Assembly: GCA_000708835.1 (NCBI GenBank)
Contig: DF237188.1
Coordinates: 66,278-130,277, forward strand
Source: Klebsormidium nitens
Lineage: Eukaryota > Plantae > Klebsormidiophyceae
Length of the DNA stretch: 64,000 bases
Direction of reading: 5' to 3'
Both the position numbers and the translations under genes were made by a program. Below are positions 3,001 through 64,000 of this stretch, piece by piece (the first letter of the stretch is position 1; each line of letters opens with the position of its first letter). The notes under the pieces are model-generated. The model was given only the letters and a program-made list of their open reading frames with translations, searched no databases and was not told the DNA's origin.

Positions 3001-5702
3001 TTCTGCCGCTGGTACACATAATCGGCGAGATAAGCAGCTGCAAGCGCGTTGAGCACTCCAGTCTTTCCATGTCTGCACGATGAACCCTTGGGCAAGCATT
3101 CAGGGGCCCCCGAAGCACAAAGGAGCGGTTTGAGAGTGTTATGAGATGCCAAGCGTGCATGAAAAGTCCCATAGAATGTTCCAAACGGTTGCATCAAGAA
3201 AATTCTCGATGCGTCAAGCTTTTGCAACAGTCTTTCTGCTTCGACAAGCTGACTGAGAGGATAAAGCAGATACCGGAGCTGGCCAAAGACACTTGACCTA
3301 AAATCTGAGGAATCAACGTTCTTGGTAGAATGACCAACCAGAAGTTCGCTTCTTCCTCTGCGAAGGGGAGCGCCGCAGAGATTGGGGAGCCGGAGATGGA
3401 GAAGAGCTGCAAGAACGACAGGCAAGGATTTCAATTGCGGGATATCTTGCGCCGTGTATGTTGGTAAAGACATTGGCAATATGAAGGCAATCAGAAAGAC
3501 CCTAAATCAAGATACTTGTTCGAAAAATTGCAGGATAGATTTCGCAAATGTGAGAAAGCTTCAATCATTGAATAGTAGGAACCAAAACAGAAATAGGCTT
3601 GTCACTTCTTCTTCCAAGGCTCTAGCTCTGACAAGTCGCCAGGACTGCTTGAAAGTACAGCAACGAAGCATATGCAAGCTCCTCTAAAAGGGACTTCCGA
3701 CACCAGAGCCTACATATGATCCACAGAAAGCAAAGAGATATTTGTACCTCTCAGACTCCTCCTGAGAAGTGCTGTCGTTGTCTAGGTTCAGGTCGTCTGA
3801 TCCAGCACCGTCAAGGTCGATCACGGGAATAGACTGCCAGTCCGTCAGCATCCTCTGCAGGGGCGACAGAGGGTTCCGTTCCCCAACCACTGGTCTCCCC
3901 TCCTCGGCGAAACCCTTTCTTTCCGGTCTGCTCTCGTGCCTCTTGCTGTTCTCGTCACCAAAGGGGCTACTAGGCAAGCTGCCTTTCACTGGACGGCTAG
4001 TCGCACTTTGCAGGGGGCCAGTACTTGGCAGCTTCGGCTGACCCAAGGAGAATGATGATGCGGCCGGGTGGTGCCTACAATTGGACAGGTCTACCGTCTG
4101 CTTCTCAGCCACTGGAGAGGGGCGCTCAGAAGTCTTGAAGCCGATAACTACAGAAGACGGCCGGGGGGTGCTTGATTGCAGGGCGGGTTCAGCTGGCTTC
4201 TGAAAGGAAGTTGCCCGCGGAACTCCTGTGCCTCTGCGTGCACTGCTGTCCATGTTGGTGCCCTGGCTGATGGATGAAGCCTCTGGTGCGGCCGCTACCT
4301 TGGCTGCAGGACTGCTCTTGGGAACGGTCGACATGGATTCAACAGAGACAAGTAGGACGCCACAGGCTAGGGAGACGGGAGCAAAAGTGAACTCATTCGG
4401 TTGCCCTGCATGAGAAAATGCCAGGATTATAATTGCATCATAGGCCACTATTGAAACATGAGCGGACACCAAAAATGGCTTATTCAAGTATCAACAACAT
4501 TGTCGACAAAGTTGTTTGCAGTGGAAGCACAGAAGGGAGGTTTATTTTGTTTCACAAAAGTCATACACTGCAAACATGCAATACATGGAGAGCGCAAAGA
4601 AACAAAGTTGCAGTTCCACTTAATGGTTTGAAAGAGGCAATTGCTGCTAGAAGGAGGTTCTGAAAGGGTGAGGAAAGAGTTACTTGCCAGGGAATGCTCG
4701 AAGGAAGGAAGTCTTCGGTCCATGGTATGCCTGGTACAGCAGGTTGCCTGTCTCAGACCGCTCTTTGCGGCCCCACATCCTTCCAGGAGCAGGCAGCAGC
4801 CGAACGCAGCTGTAAACAGACCGCAACAGACACGCCACCCCAAGGCTTTCCTGGCTGGCAGCCAGAACGCCTTCGCTGTCAGAATCTTCAGCAGCCAGGA
4901 ATGCTGCCCCTTCAACTGTGCGCTCACGTAAACAGCATTCGTCTGGGCGCATGTGGCGGTGGTGCAATTCGGCGTTTGTCTGCGGCAGCTCTTGTATCAG
5001 TCCAACTTGACTCCCGCACGATGAAACTTCCTCTCTTGCGATGTTCTCTTCTCGGCCACTGTGGCCGACGCTACTTTCAGAAGGGGACGGTTGAAAGGAA
5101 ACCCTCCATCTCTCCAGAAGCAACTTCACTCCTGGTTTCTCATCTTCCTGCTCTTTGTAGAAATCCAGATGAACCATTTGCTTGATTGCTCGTGTGGCTG
5201 ACACTGCCTCCTTCAGCAAAGGCTCGAGTCCCTGCTGGAGGCTGTTGTAACAGTCAATCTCAAGAAGACACTGCAACCAAGTGGGAGAAAGTCATCAGGA
5301 TTGCAACCAATGCCATCGTCGGTCAACCGAGGATTAGGCTAGCCAATGCGCTTGATTGTGTGGGTTTCCATTCACATTGCATTTTCCAGAACAATCATGC
5401 TGGACAATAGGCTAACATCTGGCTAAAGCAATGCCTCAGCTGGACGAGAATGTTCGATTTCCACTGCACATCGAATCAACCATCACACAACAATGTGTAA
5501 GGTATGATGCAAATCTGATGCTCAAAGTGGTCAAACATGTACGTACCGTCTTGCTTGTGCAACTTGTTTCATGAGTTGGAACAAAGTGCAGCCTACTCTG
5601 GATAATCTGCATAAAAAGGTAAAACGCACTGTCAAGCAAAAATGCCTTGATGCTGTTCAAGAAATCCAAGTCTAGGGCTCTGCACGCCTTCTCTTGACTC
5701 AT
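1..5702 (-). CDS. Atos/FAM214-family protein (DUF4210 plus Chromosome_seg C-terminal region) with an ATG13-HORMA-like N-terminus; multi-exon, 3' end lies beyond base 1
   Basis: Hand-spliced exons give [14 protein letters not shown] (~1960-2050, DUF4210 core), [33 protein letters not shown] (~1490-1635), [13 protein letters not shown] (~1040-1110), [27 protein letters not shown] (~546-625) and TFLRQKV...[13 protein letters not shown] (~76-297), which are Atos-family motifs. Upstream exons (~5275-4688, 4405-~3747, ~3407-3339, ~2926-2204) join in frame. The start is uncertain: ATG at 5702, or possibly an upstream exon at 6174. Confidence 0.85.
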
Positions 5703-7659
5703 TCCGCTGCCTCTGCCTTAGCTTGCACGTGCAACTATTGCAGGGGCCTTTCGTAAAGTACTTCTCACAGCATTGCAGGTCTTTGCCCATCGATTTACAT
5801 CAAGCAGTATTTAGACAAGCACAACAAGTCCTCAGCATTCCTTAAAGTTTTATACACTGCTTCTTGAAACAAGGATGTCTCACCACTTGAAACAGCTTGC
5901 TCAAGACTTCGTGCAATGGCTCCTTGGTCTCATTGTGCCCAACGGAGCGGTGGCTCAGTGCAGTGTCCTTCAGCAGTCCGTACGTGCAGGGGCCTCTTTC
6001 TTTCCTCAACAAGGTTTCGCTGGAAGAGATTTTGGACGCAGGACCTTTTGCTTGCTTGTCTGACCATGTACTCTTATGAATCTCTCGCTGTCTGAGCTTG
6101 AGCTGCTGAATAACAACCTGTTCGCTGTCATCCTCCTCCTCAACATCGTTTGGACCTATTATCGAGCCCGCCATTTGACCGACCTGATTGTTCTACATCA
6201 AATCATGCTCAAGGATGAAGATGGGCAGGCAGGAAGTCGTGACTCGCAAACAAGAGTGAGCCTAACGGTATGAGTGACCATATCTGCGTTCCTTTCACCA
6301 TTTCCTCCACAATCGAGCAGGACACAAGGACATTCCCCCATAGGGTGGAGACCAGGATGGAAGCCTCAAGGCTCGAACCACCTGCCTGCTCCCGGTGACG
6401 ACCACCATGCGGGCGACCACCTTGCGGGCCCCGCGACTTATGACCCCTGCTTTCACTGTCAGTGTCAGCGTGCTGTGTACATGCAATAGGTAATCAATTG
6501 CGTGTTCAAGTGCTCCGCTCAGGTTCGTCTGAGCTGGCCACCGTTTTACCCCTCCCCCCCTCCTCGACTCCGAGCCGGGTCAGCTCGATCTCGATCGAGA
6601 TCGCCGTCGGCGTGCATACGCATGAGGAAATACCGACATAGGTATTCAACATTTGTTAGATAGCCTATAGGTACCTAGCTCTTCCTTAAACCTGGTCCAG
6701 ACTTGGATCCAGACGCCAGGAACTAAAACTTTCTCAGGTCAAAATCACATTCTAGCTAATAATATTGCAAATATTTTGTCATAATAGATCAAGGCCTTCA
6801 TAATAATTCCATCATTTTCTCGAAGATAAGTGGGCACCATGCAGATAAGTGAATGCAAATCATTGATTTGGGGGGGGTGCCCGTCACAACCAGCCATGAC
6901 CTCTATGGAGAGAGATGAACACGTGGCACTGCAGTGGGGGGCAAATGAAGGCCAGAGGATATTGATGGTACGCTCGTCGGTGCCTACAAATTTTGATCTT
7001 TGCGCGCGTATATGTCTTGAACAGACCGCGCGCGAAATTTGTTGTGCATGTTCAATGCGGGCGGCTGGCCGAGCGCGGCTTTTGAAGTTTCACAAAATCC
7101 AAACCCCAAGCCTTGAGTCAGGCCTTCCAGAAGCTGACGTGGAACTCGCAGTCTTGAAAAGTGCTCTGAGACAGGATCTTTTGAACGCACGTGATTGGTT
7201 AGAAGGTCTGAAGTGGCCAATCGGGTGTTGCAGAAGTCTATCTGGTGAATCTTTTGTGGCCACCAAGTTGCGGGCCTCTACGAGTCCAGGCTTTGCTTGT
7301 TGCTGCAATGGCGAGGTGTGAAATGTTTTACTTCCTGGGCTAATAGGTTCCAAGTACCTATACCGCCAGGATAGTCCGGCTGCTCGGGGCAACGAAAAAG
7401 TGCTGATTTACATTACAAGTTATGCTGACAATACCAGTAGCGATTGCCAGAAGAGCCAAAAGACACCTGGAGGCTGAAGTCTTCTCGGCACATGTGCTCT
7501 CACGAGTGCTCGCAAGAGCCCCGTAGGCTTTTCAGCTTTCATTGTGAAGGAGCAAGGAAGCACGACCAGAGCTACCATAGACGCAGGGAGAAATCAAGAA
7601 GCAGAGCCACCTGAGTTTAAGAGTTTAGTTTCCAACACTGTTGCTTTCAGGCACAGGAA

Positions 7660-25500: not shown

Positions 25501-28122
25501 TCTCTGTCGCATGGGAACACTCTATACGAAAAATTCAAGGAGCAGAGCTTTGAACATCACCCTGCCCAAATAATCACCAGTCAACGACTTGATCACGAAC
25601 CAGGCAGGCCGAATCAAGCACCCCAGCAGGAGGGAAGGACCTATTACAACGCCACCGGTTGGTGTAACCTTCAAGAAACAGCATCTGTCGGGTTCAGTCT
25701 CGAGGGCGCGCCTCACCGGATGCCCGTCTGCAGGTTGAGCATGAGGTCGTAGCTGCGGTGGCCCTTGAAGATGGTCTCCCCCGGCCGCTTCACCTCGCGC
25801 GTCCCGCGCCGCGAGTGCCGCTTCACGCGCTCGCCGCGCGGCTCCGCCTCCGGCATGGCCTGCTCCTCCTCCGACACCAGCTTCCCCTCCACGTACTCTC
25901 GCACAACCACGCGCCGCACGCCCCCCTCGCCCCTCCCCCCGCCAAAGTTGCGCGCCAGCGTCATGTCGACAGACTGCCGCGCAGCGGCCCCCGCGTGCAT
26001 GCCCGACAGCCGCCGGTTCGCCGAGTCCTCTTCGGGCGTCGCGTGGCCGCTGCCGTTCTCGATAGTGGTCCCGTTCTGCACCCCGCTGCTGCTGCCAGAG
26101 GACTGCCCGAACAGGTCTCGCGCCAGGCCGTCGCCCGGACGGGGCACCGGCGGGCGCTGCGAGGCGAGGCGGCTGCGTGGGACCAACGGCGAGTAGACGG
26201 GCGTGCTGGCGCCGCTCTGAGAGTCACCAAAGCTGGACTCGCTCAGAGTCGTGTCGGAGTCGTATGTCAGCCCCAGGGCTGAGTTGCGGCTGCCAAAGGG
26301 GCTCGCCGCTGTTAAAAAGCGGCCGTCCTCTGGGAGGGGTTCGGAGCCTTCCCGTGGGAAGCTGAAGGAGTTCCCGTCTGCGGAGATGCTGCGGCGGTGG
26401 CTGGCCGGTGGGGGGCTCGAGATGATCGTCTTGTCTCCAGGCGGGGGAGCCTCAGGGATGCCCGCAGGGTGCGACGCCTCGCTGACGCCAACCAGTGGCG
26501 TTCTGGCGGCATTCCAGTCCGAGAAGCTGGTCACCTTCGCACTCCGCAACTTGGGCGCGTTGCCCTCGGCCTCCCCATCCTGGCCCGGGCTATCCTCAGG
26601 GAGACTGCTACCTGCCGCCTTTGTCGCAGCCTCGTCTGAAGCCTGGCTTTCATTAGCGCCTGTCCGCGCCTGTTCCTCTCCACTCTCAATGGAATCTCCC
26701 TTCCCTTCGTCCATTCCGTTCCCCGCAGCCTGCTGCTCATGGCTGCTTGCCCCTCCGTCCTCACTCTCTGCTTGCCCGCCCGCCCCAAAGTCCCCGCTGC
26801 TTGTGGGCGTTTCCTCCGGGACCCTGGGTGGCATCAGATCCTTCCTGCTGCCCTTTCTGCTGCGCAGCGCTCCAGGGGGGTAGTACACTCCCCGCCCATG
26901 GCGCAGCCCGTTGAGCCAGCTCCCCTCAAACACCGCCCCGTCCGCCCAGGTGAACACGCCCTTGCCGTTCTCGCGCCCCCCCGCCCACTCCCCGTCGTAG
27001 CGGTCACGGTTGGCCCACACAAAGATGCCGCGCCCGTCCATCTTGCCCCCCCGCCAGTTGCCGCTGTACGAATTCCCGTTGGCCCAGATGTACCGCCCCG
27101 GGCCCTCGAACGCGCCGTTCTGCCAGAGCCCGTCGTACACGTCTCCGTTCGCATACTTCTTCTTGCCCAGCCCGTGCTTCTGGTTCAAGTGCCAGCTGCC
27201 GCGATACGACTCCCCGTTGGGGCTCCGGTACGTCCCCCACCCCTCCATGACCCCCCCCATCCAGTCGCCCTCGTATACAGCCTGACTGGGCCATTGGAAC
27301 ATGCCTTTCCCGTGCTTCTTCCCAGCGGACCAGTCCCCATCATACGAGCTGCCTTCGCGCCACATGTACCGGCCCTTGCCATGTGGCACGCCCGCAGCCA
27401 CATCCCCTGTATACGAGTCTCCGTTGGGGAACTGCTTGCTCACGACGGTGGTGCGCACGCTGCCCCAGCTGCTGGTGCGTGAGTGGCCGCGCTCCCTGCA
27501 CGAATAAATGCAGCATATGCCTCAGCGGCCGATTCCTGCTATAAAAACATTTTGAGGGACAGCCAAGGCCCTCTGAGCCCACCTAAGGGCAACTCTTGTG
27601 AAACTGGGGGCCCAGTGTCGATTGATCAGGGTTGAACTTTGCTTAGAACAAGTCTGCCAAAGCTCCTCAAAGGGGGTGATTGCTTTCCAGATAGCTTGCC
27701 CTGATGTCCCTCACATTCACTTGCCACATCTGACGAAAGTAGCCAGATATGTAAAAGAAGGCAAACAAAGTTGAGAAACGTGGCATTTCTTATTCCCTAA
27801 GAAGTATGTCTTGTAGGAGTCTAGTAGCCCTGGCCTCAAGCGCAACGCAGGACAATAGAACAATCCCACCAAGATATGAGCAAGTGGACACAACAAAGAG
27901 TATTCTTAAGGGAAAGGGTTTGTTCACGGGCATTGCCAATTGTCTTACATTCCTCCTTATCCTATAACAGGACTCTTCCAGCATGTTCAAGCAGCATGGT
28001 TACATGCCGGTGCTTTTCAAGACAGTCCTTAAAACGAAAAACCCTTGATTAAAACTCGAAACTTGCCGCTGGTGACATCACTAGTGATTTCTGAACCGTG
28101 CAACGGATGCACGCTCACCCAT
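22548..28122 (-). CDS. PIP5K: Plant-type phosphatidylinositol-4-phosphate 5-kinase with 8 MORN repeats
   Basis: Eight MORN repeats lie in the large exon (~26880-27420). Motifs are [69 protein letters not shown] and [10 protein letters not shown]...SAVDP..YS.RF. The stop is at 22548. The first coding exon (ATG at 28122) is tentative. Confidence 0.95.
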
Positions 28123-55600: not shown

Positions 55601-57660
55601 GACGCAAAAGAACCGTCCGTGTGTTCTGAGAGCTGCCATCGACGGTTCACGTAAGCGTACGGACTCGTACCCCCTTCGATTGTTGAACTCCGCAAAATGT
55701 ACGTCATTGATTGCTCGCGTCAATGTACAGCGGACTCCGGAGCCGCCTGATCCCGAAACCTGTACTAGGTCCCATTGATTTCGTACCCCCAAAAGCGCAG
55801 AATTTTCCAAGGCCACCAGTACGTGCGCACACAGGCTGCAGAGCCCATGCATGACGACCTTGACATTGAAAAAGTGCACCGACGTCACTCCTTGGTTGAA
55901 CGAGCTCGACATTCGCTGCAGCCCTTCTTGCGATCCACCGCACTTCCCAATGCACGCAGGCACCCAGCAGGGAGCATTGTCTTGAAAGCGACTGAAGGTA
56001 CTCCGCCCTTGTCTCCCCTCGCCCTGCCTTGCTTGCCCCAGCTGCGCGCCAGCAAGAAAGAAACAGCAGGCAGCAGCTCGCTGCCTCACTCCACCATCGC
56101 CACCGCAAAGGAGCACTGCTGCACAAGTTGAGGCGCCGCCGAAAGATCACAGCGCAGCTTGGAGCAGCTGGAATTGATCAGGGGCCCGGCATGTGGTGGC
56201 ACCCCTGACAGCGTAAGGCAAGGCGCACGACGCTGTGGCATTGCGCAAGCTGGTCTGTGCTAGTAAAAGCAGCTAGCTGGGAGCATTGTGGGCACCAGTC
56301 GCCTTGTTTGCGTCTCTTTGTAATGTCTGGCAGCAATATGCAGATCTTGCTGGAAACTTTGGAGTCCTGTGGAACAGCTGGGCACTGCGTTCCTGATCTG
56401 CCCAGTCCCCACAATGACCAGTTTTGCACCAGCATTGCTCTTTTCTGCTCATGGGCACTCCCTAGATCCCTGCAAGAGCATCCACAGAAGAGCTCCTGGG
56501 CTTCCTCTACTACAACGCATCTGGAGAAACAGCTTTACTGCGTGGTGGTCTCACTACCTTCCGGTATGTCATCACCAGGGGCTAAGGTGCAGTACTCCTC
56601 TTTGCAGGCACATGCTCACAGCCCTGGCGGGGAGCATTGTGGTGACCACACCATCAGGACTACCGATTGAAACTCTGAGGCTGCAACACAGGTGAGGGCC
56701 GGCACATTGCGCAGCACGCGGCAGGCAGTGGGCTTGCTTTGGAGCTGGTTGGGGATCAGTGCACAAGCCCCCGGCCTGAAAGGGGCCAGATCTGGGCCTG
56801 CCAGTCCCTGTATCAGATGTCCCTGCGGTCATGAGAAAGCAAGAAGCAGGGGTTTACTGGCCTCACTCGTGATTTGTCCCCTCAATGTAACTGCTCACCT
56901 GTGGGTAAATCCAGGATAAAACAGGCTGGGTGGGAGTCGCGCCTTGTGTCCTATCAACCACTTGTGAGAGACACATTATGCACAATGGGATGGACATGAC
57001 TATGCACGAGGTCCTGACACTTCAAGTTGGAGGGCAGATCTGTCTGTGGTTCATTCCCAGAACTGTTTCACAGCTAAGAGCAGGTTGAAGTATCCAGATA
57101 GGTACTTACTTCCCTCCCCCCCAAAAAGCTCTCCTTTCCTTGGCTACTGAAGATCTTAGCAATGGCATTGTCGTAATGGACAACTCCCCTCCTTGCAGAA
57201 CACCTCTTCACAATCCCTTTCAAAGCAGAGTGTCTTGACATGTTTTCTAGCAATAAGCTCAATCAAGCAAACCACTGACATAAGCAGTGTGAATCCTCCA
57301 GAAAGATCATCCACCAAGCTCTTGTCCAGGTCGCCGTCAAGCTTCCTCCTGTTGCTCCTAGACTGGCAGCCCAACTGGGTGTGCTCTTGGGTGACGACAT
57401 CCAGTCAGCTGTACTGAGAGAATATCCCTCAGGATTCTGAAATGAGGCAAGCTGTAAGCGTCCTCTGGTCCAGGCCCATACTGGATTCAGTGTCTCGGTG
57501 TGCTTATAACCAAGGCGCTTGCTGCTCTAAGGTCTCTTCCCACACAGGAGACCCAAGGCCAGTCGCTCCAGCAGTACACACCCGCAGCCAGTCATGCCTT
57601 AACCTCAGCTTAATCCAGAGAATCTGACCATTTTTCGGCATGTCTCTGCAGGCTCACATC

Positions 57661-60469
57661 ATGGCTGCCTCGCTCTCCCTGCTGCTCCTGGCGCCGCTTG
57701 TGCTCCTCTGCTCCCTCCTGGTGGGGCTGCCTGCGGCGGCCGCACTCGACATTTTCAACCCGGGCTGGACTGCGGGGCAGGCCACCTTCTACCCGGATGC
57801 AGCACAAGGTGCGACACACGCACACGTGGCAGCTCCACCACAGGCAGCCAGACTAGTCTCTTGATTCTCCAATGGACGGGCAGGGTATCCTTTCCAATGT
57901 GTGAGCTTTTGAGGGGTTGCTTCAAGGGATTTTGGCACCATATTCGATCGTCGACAATCCTTTGGAGCCTTTCCGAGGCCCTTTTTCAGCTCAAGGAAAG
58001 CCAGAACTTTTTGAACTAGTTGGACGTCTTTCTCTTGCAGACTCTCTCTTAGCCTCCCTTTTCAGTGGATTATTAAAATAGTAAGCTGGGTAAAAGAACC
58101 GAGTTGAAAGAGACAGGAAGCAGAAAACCTGAGTAAAAATAGCACGGTCCCGAACTGTGTCATCATTTATGGGGACCTTCCTTGCAGCAGAGAATTCGCT
58201 CTGCAGTTCAAGAGGCGCTGCCTGAAAGTGGACTTGTCAACTGCTTCTAAAGTACTCCCTCATTTTACGACATCGATGAAGTAAACGGTACCTTCGGCCT
58301 TTGAATTGTCTTGTGAGTGAGGCCCGCGGATCGCCGTTCGCTGTCCTTCTGGTGCTTCCACATAAAAGACGTCAACTCCTCGTTGACGTACAGGCGGGCA
58401 GTGCCGGTACTTCGGGTACTACGGCAACGCGATCGTGGCGATCGGCAACGAGTACTGGGCCAACGGCGGCGCGTGCGGCTCGTGCTTCGAGCTGCAGTGC
58501 GACCCGAGCAACAACGGCAACGGCAATGCCGTCTACTCCTCCGGCTGCCGCCCCGGCCTGCCCGTGCTCAAAGTCACGCTCTCCGACATCACCGACGAGT
58601 GCTAGTGAGCCGCCCAGCAGCCATGAACAACCCAATGCCACCAGCAAGTGTCTTCGTTTGCGTGCGTCGTCCTTGAAGCCGCCGAACTTGCGCAGTTGCT
58701 TTCACCAGCTTCTCAACTCTAAGTTCGGTAGCACGCAGTTTATGCGCCCTTCGCAACCGACTTGCTGGGAACTGGTACAACTGGCAACGTTTCATCTTGC
58801 TGTCAAGAAGTGGATCACGCGTCCCACTTGTACCCTTCATAGATAAGAGTCTAGCCGTTCCCCTCGTCTCCTGCCGCACAAGAGCGGACATCTCCGGCTC
58901 CCAGCTTGAATACGTCCTAGAAACGTCTCAAGTCTTCCTCGGCACGAGCGGCCATTCGTGCAAGCCCACATTCTCGGCGTCACGTGCATCCCCGTGCGCT
59001 ACTGACGCCTGCTGACGTGTGTGTGCAGTGCCGACAACTGCGGCAACACGGGGTACCACTTCGACCTGGACCCCAGCAAGTACGCCGAGTTCGCCAACTT
59101 CGCGGCGGATGGGGGCGGCATCGTCTACATCAAGTGGAGGCGGTGAGCTGCCCTCCGGCTGCCCACAGCTCATGTGTTGCGAGGCCGTCTAAAAGTTTCG
59201 CATTCACACATTTGAGCAGGACAAGATGCTTCTATACCGTTTATCAAGCTGGAGCATGCTTTCCTCCGCGGATCGCGTTCTGTTGTAAAGCTTCAGCTCT
59301 GATCCATTGCAAGATTCTCAATCAGGGGGGTGAAACACAAGTTCTGGGTTGCACATTTAGGGGCCATGCCGCCTTATCTAGGGACTTCTTCTGAAAGTCA
59401 ACTTGCAACAGACTGGAGGAGACAGTCAGGTTAGGAAAAAAATACCCTACCCTGCTAGCGCTAGTCGTCCGACGGCACGAGCTCTGGCCCAACCCAGCTC
59501 GTAGCGTCACGTGGCGAGTGACCCTGTGTCTGATGGTTGTATGCGCATCGATGCAGGGTGCCGTGCAACTATCAGAAGAACCTGTTGCTGCGCGCGCACG
59601 AGCAGACCAATCCGTGGTGGCTCGGTGAGCCGCACGCTCTCCGCGCAAAGGGGTAGCACGGCCCGTTCCGGACTGGCTGTTCCTTGCACACGACTCGAGT
59701 CTATTCTGCTCGACTCCCGTGTTTCGACATATGCAAAGCTGCAGGCTCCGCTCATTTACTTCCTGCAAGGCCCGATGAATGTTTATGACCTTCAACGAGA
59801 TCGCCAACTGCTTGCAAGCATGACGAGCGCCGTGTTGCTGCCGCAGCGTTCACGGTGTTGGACCAGAACGGCGCGGGGGACATCGACCGCGTGGAGTGGA
59901 GCAGCGCCACCCGAGGTGAGCCGCGCGTGACACGGGACCCGGCGCGAGGCGCCACAGCGCGCACCGCGCTCCTCGGCCAGCCTGCCTTCTCCATGTATGA
60001 GCTCATGGACGACTGTCTGGACATCCAGGAACAGGATCAAACAGGATCATTGTCATGCAGAGTTCGTCGCTCGTACCTTCTGCAGCCGTTCTTGTAATGG
60101 ACGACCCTGCTTCGACGGCTTCGTACATCCGATCACCACTTTCCTGACGGCGTGTGCTCATTACTTTCTTCAAATGTATTGTTGCTCTCACGCTTTTTCG
60201 ACCATCACTGAAAGCTCACCCAACCCGAAGACGCGCGTGTCCGAAAGCCCCGCGCATCAAGAACGTTTTAACACCAATTGTGGTCACTAGCTTTAAGAGT
60301 TCCACGGTTTCCTGATACATCGTGCTTCACGGATTTCAACACTCTCTCCCCGCGCCCGCGTGCAGGGTGGCAAATTGCTCCGCGGTTGGCGTACTCGGGC
60401 AACACGTTCACGATTGGGGGCTACCCGTACGAGCCGCTGTCGGTGCGCATCACCGACTCGGAGCAATGA
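57661..60469 (+). CDS. Secreted expansin (DPBB domain 1 plus CBM63-like domain 2, beta-expansin-like), ending at the first in-frame stop
   Basis: Exons 57661-57808, 58394-58604, 59029-59142, 59557-59624, 59847-59915 and 60366-60469. There is a hydrophobic signal peptide, W..GQATFY, GGQCRYFG, GGACGSCFELQC, the HFDL motif, WRRVPCNY, NPWWLAFTV.DQNGAGDI..VE and PLSVRIT. Confidence 0.9.
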
Positions 60470-60610
60470 ATGTGTGTACTCTACGATGTGATGATCAGAT
60501 CAAAGGCACCTTAGCGCCCCAATTGTGAGTTCGTTAAGTTGACTGGTCTTGTCTGTTGTCGTCATTCGCCGTCATTTTGCTAACTGTTGTGCGTTCCCGC
60601 AACCCTTCAG

Positions 60611-61956
60611 GCTCCCCTCCCGCGGTCGCTGCCCCCACTCCCGTTCCCCCGTCCCCGACCCCTGCGCCGGTCAAGCCATCCCTGGGAGGAAGCAACGTGT
60701 GTGCCAGCCTGGCGTACTTCCCCACTCAGGTGACGCACGCTCGCCACTTTTCCTGGTTTGTTTGCGGGATCTTCTTCTTTCCCGCAGGAGGGATGGTGGG
60801 CGATACTCTCGAACCGGTGTTCCCCGTGGAACCAGCCCGAGGGAATCGTTGCCACTTCCCCGACGGTAGAGGCAGACTGTCTGCAAGGCGACTCGCTCTG
60901 TCAGGGATTTTTATGAACCGAATGTGCATGACAGCTGGTGCTTCGATATAATGCATTCACGAGCAATAAAGCCGGCAAGGTGGTGACTCCTTTTGACATC
61001 TGCCTTCGGTTGTGTGCAGTGTTTCTTCAACCGGGACACAACACGGTACGTCTGTTGCGATGGTCAAGGCTGCAACGGCTTCAACTCCGACAACTTGACG
61101 CCCAACTGCCGCAACAACGGGTATGTGCCGCCCAATTTCGGAGCCGGAGCCTCGCCGAGCGTCTCCCCGCAGAGCCCCTCGACGCCCCCACCCCCGACTG
61201 GAGGAGCGCAAGGTATGACACGCTGGCCCACAAATGCCTCAAAATATCAGCTGGATAACATGACAATGGCGTCGGACTAAGGAGACTCGATATGTTTTGC
61301 CGCTGCAAGCCGTTGGTGTTCTCAGGAGATTCTTTTGGCTTCGACGAACTTAGAAGTATGCCGTTCAGTGGGCACAAGGCTCCGCACCCGTCCAACTCCT
61401 TAGCGTTTCGAAGTTCCCGAAGGAAAGAAGGTGCCTTGCCATCTATGTAGCTCGCGAACTCAAGCAACCAATCCAAACAAGATTTCCAACTTTATTGGGT
61501 TCACTGATATAGAGGCATCAATGCAGCTCAAGCGGCTAGATGATCTCTGCACTGCCGTGCATGATTCGCAAAAGAGTAACTGAACAGGGTTATGGTGTGT
61601 CACTTTAGGATGTTGGCAATTTGTTGGACTAACGCTGCCGCTTATGCCTCGCTTTGGAGGGTTTGTCTATTACGGCAATCGAGACCAACATCATCATAAA
61701 CGGGCCTCGTTCTGGTTATTCGTTATGCGTACAGCAAGCTTGCTTGACCAGGGCTTAACTCAAAGACTCTTCTCTTTACGCAGGAGTGTGCGGAACGGGT
61801 TCGGCAACAAATTTTCCCACCCGTTGTTGGTTCAACAGCGATCCTTCTGGAAGGTACGTTTGTTGCGACAGTCAAGGTTGCGACGGCTTCAATAGCGACA
61901 ACTGGACCCCTCACTGTAAAAACTATGGGTACGTGCCTCCACGTTTTGGCACCTAG
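60611..61956 (+). CDS. Three exons encoding a Pro-rich linker and two copies of an unrecognised six-Cys module; probably the C-terminal extension of the expansin (possibly pseudogenised or alternatively spliced)
   Basis: Exons 60611-60729, 61020-61212 and 61784-61956 have canonical AG/GT sites and compatible phases, and end at TAG 61954-61956. The two modules share 33 of 46 aligned residues. Confidence 0.7.
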
Positions 61957-63216
61957 TGACGGTGGGTCATTTTGCACGCCACGTTCTTCGAGTCAACGTT
62001 AGAGGCACCGTGACAGAGATTCAATAGTTCCTTCCGCCAAATGCAAATGATTTTGCAATGTTTATAGCTGGCGAAATCTGTCATAAGTTATTGTGCGCGA
62101 CTCAGAGAGGGAGTAGGCAGTTTGAGTTGGGCCTCAAGGCTCTTTTGAAATGAAGAGCTAGCTAGAGTGCGCGGTCAGAGATGAATTCATTTGATAGATT
62201 TCCGGAAGTGCACGACCGATCATTTTCGGGGACTACAATTGGTCGGACACTGCACCAAGGCTAGCCATATATCTCGATGGCATTACAAATAGGCTTACGA
62301 GATGTTGTTGTCAGAAAATAGGATTTCCAAGCAAACATTCACACGATGATGTCCGTTCCAATGATGCAATTCCAATCCTATTGATTCAAAGCAACAAGGG
62401 ACTTGTGGATGTCGGACGGTGACGCTTGACAAAGTTTGATTGTTCAACCTACTATTTGAAAGTGAGACCCAAAAGCAAATTGAAAATAGTTCGTGAACAG
62501 TTATGCTAAAAGGCGATCGTCAAACGGCGGTGCTGTTCAGATGGTGCATGCATATGTACATGAATCTTTTTGCGCTCATAAGGCTGCAAGAACGTGTGCC
62601 TTGAATGGATGCCTCGCCCTTCTTTGCCATGTGGTTGATACTGGTCACATAAGTGAACGTTCATGTTTTAACGTACTTGTTCCAAGATCTGCTTCCATGA
62701 TCAACACGTTAGGTGTTTGCATCTACGTACTTGGAGTTCTAGCACCTGAGGATGACTTTTTTCGTCGCACATGTAAGTTGTGGTGTTTGCTCGTGCATAA
62801 CCTTGCAGGTTCGTTTGCATTAAACTCACCCCGGCATCGTCCCAGTATGCTATTGATATTCTGCCGGTGTCTTATTACCAACTTGCCTAAGTTCTTGTAC
62901 GTACTTAGGTTGAACGCGCACATTCCTAGTTTGTTGCGTCCTCATGTGCTCACCGACGTGTATACGCTTTAATATGTCATGTCCTAGAGGCTTTTGCCCT
63001 CCATACATGAAGTCCTATTCTATCAAGCACCGCTCCGGTTTCGCTCTGCTTGCTGCTTCGTTCCGATGGCATATCAGTAGATCAAATTGCTCGCATTCGG
63101 ACCGCTTCGTATCCCTACTACACTTTCCGCACGGCTCGGCCCGGCGGATCGAATTCAGGTCGTCTACCGAAAATGTTGAAGTCCACAGTCTATAGTGCCT
63201 TTAAAGGATAAAAGTT

Positions 63217-63629: not shown

Positions 63630-64000
63630 TTATGCAATTCCTATCTCGCTCTTGCACTTCTTGAACTTCCCTGGTGCTAACGCGTTGGTCATGATGTCCG
63701 CCTTCATGTCCTCCGTCCCGCAGTACGCGAACGCGACCTCCTTGCGTGCCACACGCTCCCGTGCAAAATGATGAATCACGTCAATGTGCTTCGACCGCTG
63801 TGAAGCGATCGGGTGCTTGAGGAGCCATATTGCCCCTTGGTTGTCGCAGTAGATCAGGACCGTCCCGAGGTCCAACTCAAGGTCTCCCCCGAGTTTGGGG
63901 AACCACAGCGCCTCCTTCAGCGCTTGCGCTGCGCTCATATACTCCGCCTCTACCGTCGAGGCCGCCACCGTTGGCTGCAGCCTACTCGACCAGCTCACCG
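63630..64000 (-). mobile_element. Ty1/copia LTR retrotransposon pol, RNase H C-terminus (partial; continues beyond the window)
   Basis: SWSSRLQPTVAASTVEAEYM, IYCDNQGAI, RSKHIDVIHHFARE and ADIMTNAL are the copia RNase H motifs. The stop is followed by a PPT and an LTR. Confidence 0.95.

What the first reader, a model, noticed from the sequence alone, without database searches (positions are those of the whole stretch)
60611..61956. Expansin followed by a tandem pair of an unrecognised six-cysteine, aromatic-rich module
Seen in sequence: three spliceable exons downstream of the expansin encode SPPAVAAPTPVPPSPTPAP, then module 1 (VCASLAYFPTQCFFNRDTTRYVCCDGQGCNGFNSDNLTPNCRNNGYVPPNFG), a second S/P linker, then module 2 (VCGTGSATNFPTRCWFNSDPSGRYVCCDSQGCDGFNSDNWTPHCKNYGYVPPRFG). 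They share 33 of 46 aligned residues and the pattern C-x-C-x-CC-x4-C-x11-C. Established: canonical expansins have two domains and no such tail. Inference: this is a disulfide-bonded, F/Y/W-rich extracellular module on a linker likely to be O-glycosylated. That layout resembles a carbohydrate-binding module on a cell-wall enzyme. I do not recognise the family, so it may be a new wall-anchoring domain on an algal expansin.
Basis: partly seen in the sequence, partly recalled or inferred. Interest (0 to 1): 0.8.

Follow-up and report, generated by a model that had tools for sequence, protein, structure and literature searches.

The report
Broken algal expansin with orphan cysteine modules
Downstream of a Klebsormidium nitens expansin gene lie three correctly spliced exons for two copies of a small six-cysteine module that matches no known domain or fold, but this alga carries the module on many other secreted proteins, and here two stop codons cut it off from the expansin.

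Summary
Exons 60611-60729, 61020-61212 and 61784-61956 have matching splice phases and encode Pro/Ser linkers plus two six-cysteine modules. One RNA contig removes exactly the predicted last intron.

The module is a real family: 24 cluster representatives at E<=1e-10 among 1.84 billion proteins, and 76 copies in 38 proteins. Every named source is Klebsormidium (K. nitens, K. subtile); most carriers are secreted EGF-like proteins. It has no Pfam or PDB sequence hit. AlphaFold gives a confident small beta module (pLDDT 94.6) with no match in PDB, ESM Atlas or BFVD.

This scan has already met the module on other DNA of this genome (notes s1-299410, s1-313253, s1-282088), so it is not special to this expansin.

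The window is the last 64 kb of a K. nitens scaffold. The public expansin model kfl00239_0180 ends at TGA 60467-69. That TGA and a TAG at 60512-14 separate the expansin frame from the tail.

A syntenic metagenome orthologue (L002) has the same expansin-linker-module-linker-module layout, one base short of a single ORF. The fusion is therefore ancestral.

In the K. nitens reference the tail is either a very recent relic or reached by in-frame skipping of exon 6. Binding to the wall or to sugars is inferred, not tested.

The parts
57661..57808 (+). Expansin exon 1: ATG, signal peptide and start of domain 1 (phase-1 donor GTGCGA)
   Evidence: Translation. 56% identical to the start of the L002 orthologue, including the signal peptide and the GWTAGQATFY-type motif.
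58394..58604 (+). Expansin exon 2: domain 1 (DPBB) core with the GGACG motif and conserved Cys
   Evidence: Pfam DPBB_1 at E 0.0016 for this exon alone, below the gathering score. The best PDB sequence matches are two beta-expansins, E about 0.26. 77% identical to L002.
59029..59142 (+). Expansin exon 3: end of domain 1 with the HFD motif
   Evidence: The translation contains GYHFDLD. 83% identical to L002, dN/dS 0.17.
59557..59624 (+). Expansin exon 4: start of domain 2
   Evidence: Translation. In L002 this exon is fused to exon 5 with no intron between them.
59847..59915 (+). Expansin exon 5: domain 2, ending in phase 1 at a GTGAGC donor
   Evidence: Its phase-1 donor is compatible with the phase-1 acceptor of tail exon 1, so skipping exon 6 stays in frame.
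60366..60469 (+). Expansin exon 6 up to the in-frame TGA (60467-69), which is the end of the public model kfl00239_0180
   Evidence: The end of the published gene (scaffold position 126,746) maps to 60469 when the window is taken as the last 64,000 bases of the 130,277-base contig.
60470..60524 (+). Rest of the ancestral exon 6: still in the expansin frame, with a second stop TAG at 60512-14. It ends in phase 1 at the GTGAGT donor (60525).
   Evidence: It is homologous to the open C-terminal coding stretch of L002 exon 6. The TAG aligns with a TAC (Tyr) codon of L002.
60525..60610 (+). 86-nt intron (GTGAGT...CAG) between ancestral exon 6 and tail exon 1
   Evidence: Splice-site reading. L002 has the equivalent phase-1 intron. 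No RNA evidence here.
60611..60729 (+). Tail exon 1: Pro/Ser/Ala linker and the first Cys of module 1. It has no start codon or signal peptide of its own.
   Evidence: 52% identical to L002 6092-6211, with the same intron position before the second Cys.
61020..61212 (+). Tail exon 2: rest of module 1 (five Cys) and the second Ser/Pro linker
   Evidence: Family profile E 2e-20. The RNA contig covers 61166-61212. dN/dS 0.27 against L002.
61213..61783 (+). Intron removed in RNA
   Evidence: The contig of run X2 skips 571 bases, GT..AG.
61784..61956 (+). Tail exon 3: complete module 2 and stop TAG 61954-56
   Evidence: Family profile E 5e-32. No deviation at the 20 family-conserved columns. AlphaFold pLDDT 94.6. 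RNA contig to 61979. dN/dS 0.036 against L002.

Best explanation
This is the 3' end of the Klebsormidium nitens expansin gene kfl00239_0180.

Ancestral gene. It encoded one secreted protein: signal peptide, expansin domains 1 and 2, a Pro/Ser linker, a six-cysteine module, a second linker and a second module.

The module. It belongs to a family seen so far only in Klebsormidium. It is about 55 residues long with six invariant Cys (three disulfides inferred) and is predicted to be a small four-stranded beta domain. It normally occurs in one to four copies at the C-terminal end of secreted proteins, behind Pro/Ser/Thr linkers.

Likely role. By analogy with CBM1-type tags and with microbial expansin-CBM fusions, it most likely holds its carrier on a wall polymer or matrix partner. 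This is inferred, not shown.

State in the K. nitens reference. Two nonsense codons in the last expansin exon (TGA 60467-69, TAG 60512-14) cut the reading frame before the linker. The annotated product is therefore an expansin lacking the last strands of domain 2. The tail exons are still transcribed and correctly spliced and show no decay. I take them to be a very recently stranded, spliced 3' region and not part of the main protein product.
For: Gene structure and RNA:
- Splice phases are consistent across all nine exons.
- The last intron is removed in RNA.
- Tail exon 1 has no ATG or signal peptide and needs a phase-1 upstream exon. Only the expansin gene, 86 nt upstream, can supply one.

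Orthologue L002:
- It lies on the same 35,588-base contig as the PIP5K orthologue of the window's PIP5K gene.
- It has the same order of expansin exons and three tail exons.
- Its last expansin exon runs open to a phase-1 donor that joins the linker in frame. Only one base is missing, next to a G4 run.

Family and novelty of the module:
- 24 representatives at E<=1e-10 among 1.84 billion proteins.
- Named sources are only K. nitens and K. subtile.
- 76 copies in 38 proteins.
- No Pfam, PDB or fold match, with a confident model.

The stops and the public model:
- The stops are read directly.
- The public model ends at the TGA (mapped through).
- No annotated protein combines an expansin with this module.

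Expression and constraint:
- Expression is very low: of 24 listed runs only one held any of the stretch, and that one held 4% of the sampled words.
- Expansin exons show relaxed constraint (dN/dS 0.44).
Against: - The tail shows no sign of decay. There is no stop or frameshift in 160 codons, all splice sites are intact, and module 2 has 0 of 20 deviations at family-conserved columns. dN/dS is 0.14-0.16 against L002.
- Both stops fall within one 19-codon stretch that has otherwise diverged strongly from L002. This pattern would also fit a stretch that is spliced out while the tail is still translated.
- No RNA was recovered across 59,900-61,160, so the actual junction is unknown.
- Binding has not been tested. 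Most carriers are EGF-like proteins and not enzymes, so the CBM analogy is not secure.
Confidence: 0.5

Rival explanations
1. The tail is still part of a K. nitens protein. The stretch carrying the two stops is bypassed by alternative splicing. The route could be skipping of exon 6 (the exon 5 donor and the tail exon 1 acceptor are both phase 1) or use of a weak internal donor. The product would be expansin domain 1, a shortened domain 2 and the two modules.
For: - Skipping exon 6 is in frame and gives an open junction.
- The tail is intact and constrained and correctly spliced in RNA.
- Both stops cluster in 19 codons, while 160 tail codons and 237 upstream codons have none.
- L002 also has its only lesion in the same exon.
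Against: - No read shows such a junction.
- No canonical GT-AG intron bypasses the stops while keeping the 60611 acceptor. The only options are GC donors at 60398, 60419 or 60446, or a GT donor at 60442 joined to an acceptor inside the linker.
- The product would lack about half of domain 2.
- The first part of exon 6 is conserved as coding sequence.
Confidence: 0.3
2. The two stops are errors or strain-specific variants of the reference assembly. The real gene is then one open expansin-linker-module-linker-module frame.
For: - Both stops are one base from sense codons, and the TAG aligns with a Tyr codon (TAC) of L002.
- The frame and splice phase are otherwise continuous.
Against: - Two independent substitution errors within 45 bases are unlikely.
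- The stretch between and around them has also diverged strongly from L002 and is two codons shorter.
Confidence: 0.08
3. The module is not a carbohydrate binder. It may instead be a protein-protein adhesion or cross-linking unit of the extracellular matrix, or a ligand or receptor-type cysteine knot. Its place on the expansin would then be incidental domain shuffling.
For: - Most carriers are EGF-like, LDL-receptor-A-like or otherwise non-enzymatic secreted proteins.
- There is no similarity in sequence or fold to any CBM.
- The most conserved non-Cys residues are polar (N17, D19, R23, D28) as well as aromatic.
Against: - The layout is that of CBM tags: C-terminal tandem copies on Pro/Ser/Thr linkers, with several conserved aromatic positions (F10, W/Y15, F16, Y24, F35, Y49).
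- It is attached to a wall-loosening protein in two species.
- Microbial expansins repeatedly gained CBMs (10.1101/637728).
Confidence: 0.3
4. The tail exons are an independent gene or chance open frames unrelated to the expansin.
For: The public annotation does not join them to the expansin.
Against: - Tail exon 1 has no start codon or signal peptide and begins mid-codon at an acceptor site.
- The same arrangement is conserved in L002.
- Profile scores are 5e-32 and 2e-20, and the exons are spliced in RNA.
Confidence: 0.02

Closest known systems
Klebsormidium six-cysteine module on EGF-like secreted proteins (for example K. nitens GAQ79076.1, GAQ89934.1, GAQ85452.1; unnamed in Pfam)
   Same: Same domain family. 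Module 2 is 82-88% identical to copies in GAQ89934.1 and keeps all six Cys and all 20 family-conserved columns. Like them it sits at a C-terminus behind Pro/Ser linkers.
   Different: Here the carrier is an expansin and not an EGF-like protein. Module 1 is a divergent copy, with a shorter first loop and loss of the conserved Pro20 and Gly22. The reading frame to the carrier is interrupted.
Microbial expansin-CBM fusions (fungal swollenins with CBM1; bacterial expansins with CBM2 or CBM32)
   Same: A two-domain expansin is extended through a flexible linker by one or two small accessory modules presumed to target the wall (10.1101/637728).
   Different: The module is unrelated in sequence and predicted fold to CBM1, CBM2 or CBM32. 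The host is a streptophyte alga. No binding has been shown.
CBM1 (fungal cellulose-binding domain) and hevein/CBM18
   Same: Small disulfide-stabilised beta modules with conserved aromatic residues, joined to carriers by Ser/Thr/Pro linkers, often in tandem (own knowledge).
   Different: No Pfam match at E<=1, a different number and spacing of Cys, and no structural match.
Canonical plant EXPA expansins
   Same: The upstream gene has a signal peptide, a domain 1 with GGACG and HFD motifs, and the start of domain 2. It is listed as EXPA in PMC11547041.
   Different: The ancestral form has a C-terminal linker and module tail. The K. nitens frame stops before the last strands of domain 2.
Second Klebsormidium six-cysteine module (C-termini of GAQ77602.1 and GAQ78935.1)
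   Same: Same order of Cys (C...C...CC...C...C) and similar length. It often follows the present module in one protein. Profile-profile P-value is 4e-4 with the Cys in register.
   Different: Only 34% hhalign probability and a lower-confidence model (pLDDT 79.9). Kinship is not established.

Membership tests
Klebsormidium six-cysteine module family (unnamed) | Six Cys in register: C-x9-11-C-x10-11-CC-x4-C-x11-12-C | tested here: met
   Both window copies align with all Cys in register with 76 family copies.
Klebsormidium six-cysteine module family (unnamed) | Significant match to the family profile | tested here: met
   Six-frame scan of the window: 5e-32 (module 2) and 2e-20 (exon 2 part of module 1); next best 0.57.
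Klebsormidium six-cysteine module family (unnamed) | Family-conserved residues (20 columns at >=90% from the second Cys onward) | tested here: met
   Module 2 has 0 deviations and module 1 has 2 (Pro20 to Thr; Gly22 deleted). The other 71 copies have median 0 and mean 0.63.
Klebsormidium six-cysteine module family (unnamed) | C-terminal position behind a Pro/Ser/Thr linker on a protein with a signal peptide, in one open frame | tested here: not met
   The gene layout fits, but TGA 60467-69 and TAG 60512-14 break the frame between carrier and tail. The feature is met, apart from one missing base, in the orthologue L002.
Expansin (EXPA) | Signal peptide plus domain 1 (DPBB) with conserved Cys, GACG-type and HFD motifs | tested here: met
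   Exon translations. DPBB_1 at E 0.0016 for exon 2 alone, below the gathering score. The best PDB sequence hits are beta-expansins at E 0.26. Listed as EXPA in PMC11547041. The joined protein was not searched.
Expansin (EXPA) | Complete domain 2 (CBM63) | tested here: inconclusive
   Exons 4-6 encode about 80 residues of domain 2. The frame stops where L002 continues for about 25 more residues with expansin-like C-terminal features. No Pfam hit on the short single exons.
CBM1 / CBM18 (hevein) / CBM14 / CBM49 | Match to the family's Pfam profile | tested here: not met
   No Pfam family at E<=1 for any tail exon, nor for the module-bearing parts of relatives.
Any solved small disulfide-rich fold (knottin, EGF, TSR, hevein, CBM1) | Structural similarity of a confident model | tested here: not met
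   Model pLDDT 94.6. Foldseek against PDB: best E 3.7, TM<=0.26. VIA-align against 48,161 chains: none at Z>=2. ESM Atlas: TM<=0.43. BFVD: none. A missing match for a 56-residue domain is weak evidence.
Carbohydrate-binding module in the functional sense | Demonstrated binding to a polysaccharide | not testable with these tools
   Needs recombinant protein and binding assays.

The most novel reading that the evidence does not exclude
The module is a new carbohydrate-binding or wall-anchoring domain family with a fold not yet seen. It was invented in the Klebsormidium lineage and used to tether many secreted proteins, including an expansin. In K. nitens the expansin-borne copies are still made, through splicing that bypasses the two stop codons.
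Probability: 0.2. Interest if true: 0.7.

Novelty: new variant of a known kind. Interest (0 to 1): 0.45.

Why it matters
Klebsormidium is a key reference for how green algae adapted their walls to life on land. A lineage-specific, well-folding, disulfide-rich module is attached to dozens of its secreted proteins, and ancestrally to an expansin. That would point to a private way of anchoring proteins in the wall. If binding is shown, it would be a new CBM family.

For annotation, the finding shows three things. The public expansin model kfl00239_0180 stops at a nonsense codon inside what was a longer gene. Three spliced exons downstream are unannotated. The family has no Pfam entry.

The interest of this particular locus is limited, because the frame is broken here and the module has already been noted elsewhere in this genome.

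Tried and rejected
- Word search with module 2 found nothing. It sees only proteins of 31-98 residues.
- The ESM Atlas feature search gave no usable hit.
- Two metagenome scans with expansin exon 2, alone and aligned with L002, found no further orthologue.
- Exact look-ups of the window's open frames found none of them in the protein collection.
- RNA runs: 24 runs were listed and only one held any of the stretch. The four runs laid gave one contig, so the junction between the expansin and the tail could not be seen.
- I first took P0011 to carry an expansin end ahead of its modules. Its locus L001 has no expansin exons, so I rejected this.
- I tested whether one of the stops sits at a conserved Trp, as note s1-355457 says. 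Against L002 the TAG aligns with a Tyr codon and the TGA with no Trp.
- I looked for a canonical intron that bypasses the stops and found none that keeps the 60611 acceptor.
- I folded the second six-Cys module type, hoping a known fold would place both. It matched nothing.
- Papers: no paper names these proteins or describes the module.
Module 1 was analysed only as its two exon pieces and the expansin only exon by exon. Frames across junctions were checked locally.

Full report
WHAT IS IN THE SEQUENCE

On the + strand from 57661 to 60469 lies a six-exon expansin gene. Its parts are:
- exon 1 (57661-57808), with ATG and signal peptide;
- exons 2-3 (58394-58604, 59029-59142), encoding domain 1 with the GGACG and HFD motifs;
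- exons 4-6 (59557-59624, 59847-59915, 60366 onward), encoding domain 2.

Introns begin with GTGAGC, GTGAGT or GTGCGA and end with CAG. Exon 2 alone gives a weak Pfam DPBB_1 match (E 0.0016). Its best PDB sequence matches are two beta-expansins (E about 0.26).

- T1, 60611-60729;
- T2, 61020-61212;
- T3, 61784-61956.

Their splice phases agree (1 to 0, 0 to 1, 1 to stop). T1 encodes a Pro/Ser/Ala linker and the first Cys of module 1. T2 encodes the rest of module 1 and a second linker. T3 encodes all of module 2 and ends at TAG 61954-56.

Over the T2 part the two modules share 30 of 41 residues. A scan of all six frames of the window with a family profile finds these two copies (5e-32 and 2e-20) and nothing else.

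TRANSCRIPTION

Only one of the 24 listed runs of this species held any of the stretch, and it held 4% of the sampled words. Laying four runs gave one 243-nt contig (run X2, depth 2.6). It joins 61166-61212 to 61784-61979 and skips 571 bases with GT..AG ends.

The last predicted intron is therefore really removed, and the tail is transcribed at a low level. Nothing was recovered over the expansin exons or over the junction between expansin and tail.

WHICH ORGANISM AND WHICH GENE

An open frame at 25713-27455 (- strand) is 580/580 identical to K. nitens GAQ85523.1, a PIP5K encoded on a 130,277-base contig.

The supplementary table of PMC11547041 lists the expansin kfl00239_0180_v1.1 at scaffold positions 122,889-126,746. 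It has 288 residues and 8 exons and is classed as EXPA. With an offset of 66,277 the window is exactly the last 64,000 bases of that contig. The published gene then runs from an ATG at 56612 to 60469, the last base of the TGA.

So the public model ends at the TGA and does not include the tail. A length-appropriate word search also found no annotated protein that combines an expansin with this module.

THE BREAK

In the expansin frame exon 6 reads through TGA (60467-69). Fourteen codons later it meets TAG (60512-14). It then reaches a good GTGAGT donor at 60525 in phase 1, the phase the T1 acceptor needs.

T1 has no start codon and no signal peptide and begins mid-codon, so it can only be a downstream exon of the expansin gene. 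No canonical GT-AG intron bypasses the stops while keeping the 60611 acceptor. Only weak GC donors, or a GT donor at 60442 joined to an acceptor inside the linker, would do so. Skipping exon 6 altogether is in frame, because exon 5 ends in phase 1.

THE ORTHOLOGUE

One hit of the large protein search (P0018) led to a 35,588-base metagenome contig, locus L002. The same contig also encodes the orthologue of the window's PIP5K (P0043, 64% identity). This is conserved synteny.

L002 has the expansin exons and the three tail exons in the same order:
- 56-83% amino-acid identity in the expansin exons;
- 52-75% in the tail;
- the same intron before the second Cys of module 1;
- no intron between exons 4 and 5.

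Its exon 6 continues past the point of the K. nitens TGA with an open, expansin-like C-terminal stretch. That stretch ends at a GTGAGC donor in phase 1, which joins the linker exon in frame.

Exon 6 of L002 is 185 bases long, one short of a multiple of three, and the frame changes next to a run of four G. One more G would make the whole gene a single open frame (inference). The expansin-linker-module-linker-module layout is therefore ancestral to both organisms.

Against L002, the K. nitens TAG aligns with a TAC (Tyr) codon. The stretch around the stops is poorly conserved and two codons shorter. I found no support for the idea in note s1-355457 that a stop replaces a conserved Trp.

CONSTRAINT

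Nei-Gojobori estimates, window against L002:
- expansin exons: dN/dS 0.44 (dS 0.52);
- tail: 0.16;
- T2+T3: 0.14;
- T3: 0.036.

Synonymous sites in the tail are close to saturation. The modules are also so conserved across the family that orthology of single modules is uncertain: window module 2 is nearer to copies in other K. nitens genes, up to 88%, than to L002 module 2.

At the 20 columns conserved in at least 90% of the other 71 copies, deviations number 0 in window module 2, 2 in module 1, and 2 and 1 in the L002 modules. The family median is 0 and the mean 0.63.

So the tail has not visibly decayed, while both stops sit in one 19-codon stretch. That argues either for a very recent truncation or for a route that bypasses this stretch. 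I cannot decide between them without RNA across the junction.

THE MODULE FAMILY

A profile of the two window copies, run against 1.84 billion representative proteins, found 24 proteins, all at E<=1e-10. With a follow-up word search there are 38 proteins holding 76 copies.

Every source that carries a name is K. nitens or K. subtile. The rest are unnamed Logan, ENA and JGI contigs.

Carriers:
- mostly proteins with a signal peptide, EGF-like domains and three or four C-terminal copies separated by Pro/Ser/Thr linkers;
- others with LDL-receptor-A-like repeats, a DUF7933-like region or a single copy.

K. subtile transcripts show that family members are expressed.

Family consensus, where '.' marks a variable position:
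- vcg.g.a..Fp.rC.fNnDPqGRYVCCD..GCdGFn.dnl.PhCkn.GyVPp..g

Evidence on novelty:
- no Pfam family matches at E<=1;
- no PDB chain matches by sequence at E<=10;
- AlphaFold2 with a 42-sequence family alignment gives mean pLDDT 94.6 and pTM 0.77, with four short strands;
- Foldseek against PDB gives best E 3.7 and TM<=0.26;
- VIA-align against 48,161 chains gives nothing at Z>=2;
- ESM Atlas gives TM<=0.43;
- BFVD gives nothing.

For a 56-residue domain a missing structural match is only weak evidence of a new fold.

A second six-Cys module at the C-termini of four carriers has the same order of Cys and a suggestive but inconclusive profile match (P 4e-4, probability 34%). It also matches no known family or fold.

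I found no paper that names these proteins or describes the module.

HOW IT MOST LIKELY WORKS

Shown:
- the module is an independently folding, extracellular-type, disulfide-rich unit;
- it is placed in tandem at C-termini behind linkers;
- it was joined to an expansin in the common ancestor of two Klebsormidium-like organisms.

Inferred:
- the six Cys form three disulfides, and the linkers are O-glycosylated or hydroxylated;
- the module acts as a tag that holds its carrier on a wall polymer or matrix partner. This rests on the conserved aromatic positions and the CBM-like layout, and on the precedent that microbial expansins repeatedly gained CBM1, CBM2 or CBM32 (10.1101/637728).

A protein-binding or cross-linking role is a serious rival, because most carriers are not enzymes.

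COMPARISON AND NOVELTY

The closest known relatives are unnamed: the same module on K. nitens EGF-like proteins. In function the nearest analogues are swollenin-type expansin-CBM fusions and CBM1 or hevein-type tags. Membership of those families was tested by Pfam profile and by fold and was not met.

Earlier notes of this scan describe six-cysteine modules on other DNA of this genome (s1-299410, s1-313253, s1-282088 and others). My results agree that the EGF-linked module is the same family. Whether the xylanase-linked module of s1-261812 is this family or the second type I did not test; no xylanase appeared among my hits.

I rate this as a new variant of a known kind: an undescribed accessory module family on secreted wall proteins, seen here at a locus whose frame is broken.

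LIMITS

Exons were searched singly by reference, and junction frames were only checked locally.
- No DNA reads were laid, so the two stops rest on the assembly alone.

Noticed in passing
window 56612-57660: The public model kfl00239_0180 (8 exons, 288 residues) starts at an ATG at 56612. That is about 1 kb upstream of the ATG at 57661, which opens a typical signal peptide conserved with the L002 orthologue. The extra 5' exons of the public model may be spurious.
   Followed up: partly
L002 4941-5083: In the orthologue, expansin exons 4 and 5 form one exon. The K. nitens intron 59625-59846 is absent there, so an intron was gained or lost between the two organisms.
   Followed up: partly
P0016:111-161, P0017:339-390, P0022:319-369, P0024:387-437: A second about 50-residue six-Cys module (consensus CP.V.GF..NSCF...G..HVCC.NPDSC......G.P.C) follows the present module in four proteins. 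It has the Cys in the same order and a weak profile match (P 4e-4). It has no Pfam or fold match either.
   Followed up: partly
window exons against L002: Synonymous divergence is about three times higher in the tail exons (dS about 1.6) than in the expansin exons (dS about 0.5) of the same gene pair. Possible causes are exchange of modules between paralogues, codon-usage effects or saturation. Unexplained.
   Followed up: no
L001 3445-6504: Another contig of the same metagenome carries at least four module-coding exons in a row (3445-3504, 4264-4392, 4960-5166, 6343-6504) with no expansin exons. A reverse-transcriptase gene lies 3 kb downstream.
   Followed up: no
window 63630-63998 (- strand): An open frame running off the window end looks by eye like the C-terminal (RNase H) end of a Ty1/copia-type retrotransposon polyprotein. 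Pfam gave no hit at E<=0.01.
   Followed up: partly
window 25713-27455 (- strand): Large exon of the MORN-repeat PIP5K gene GAQ85523.1, 100% identical. A Logan contig encodes a 90% identical copy (P0042), so a close relative of K. nitens is present in public read archives. It could supply a third allele of the expansin-tail gene.
   Followed up: no
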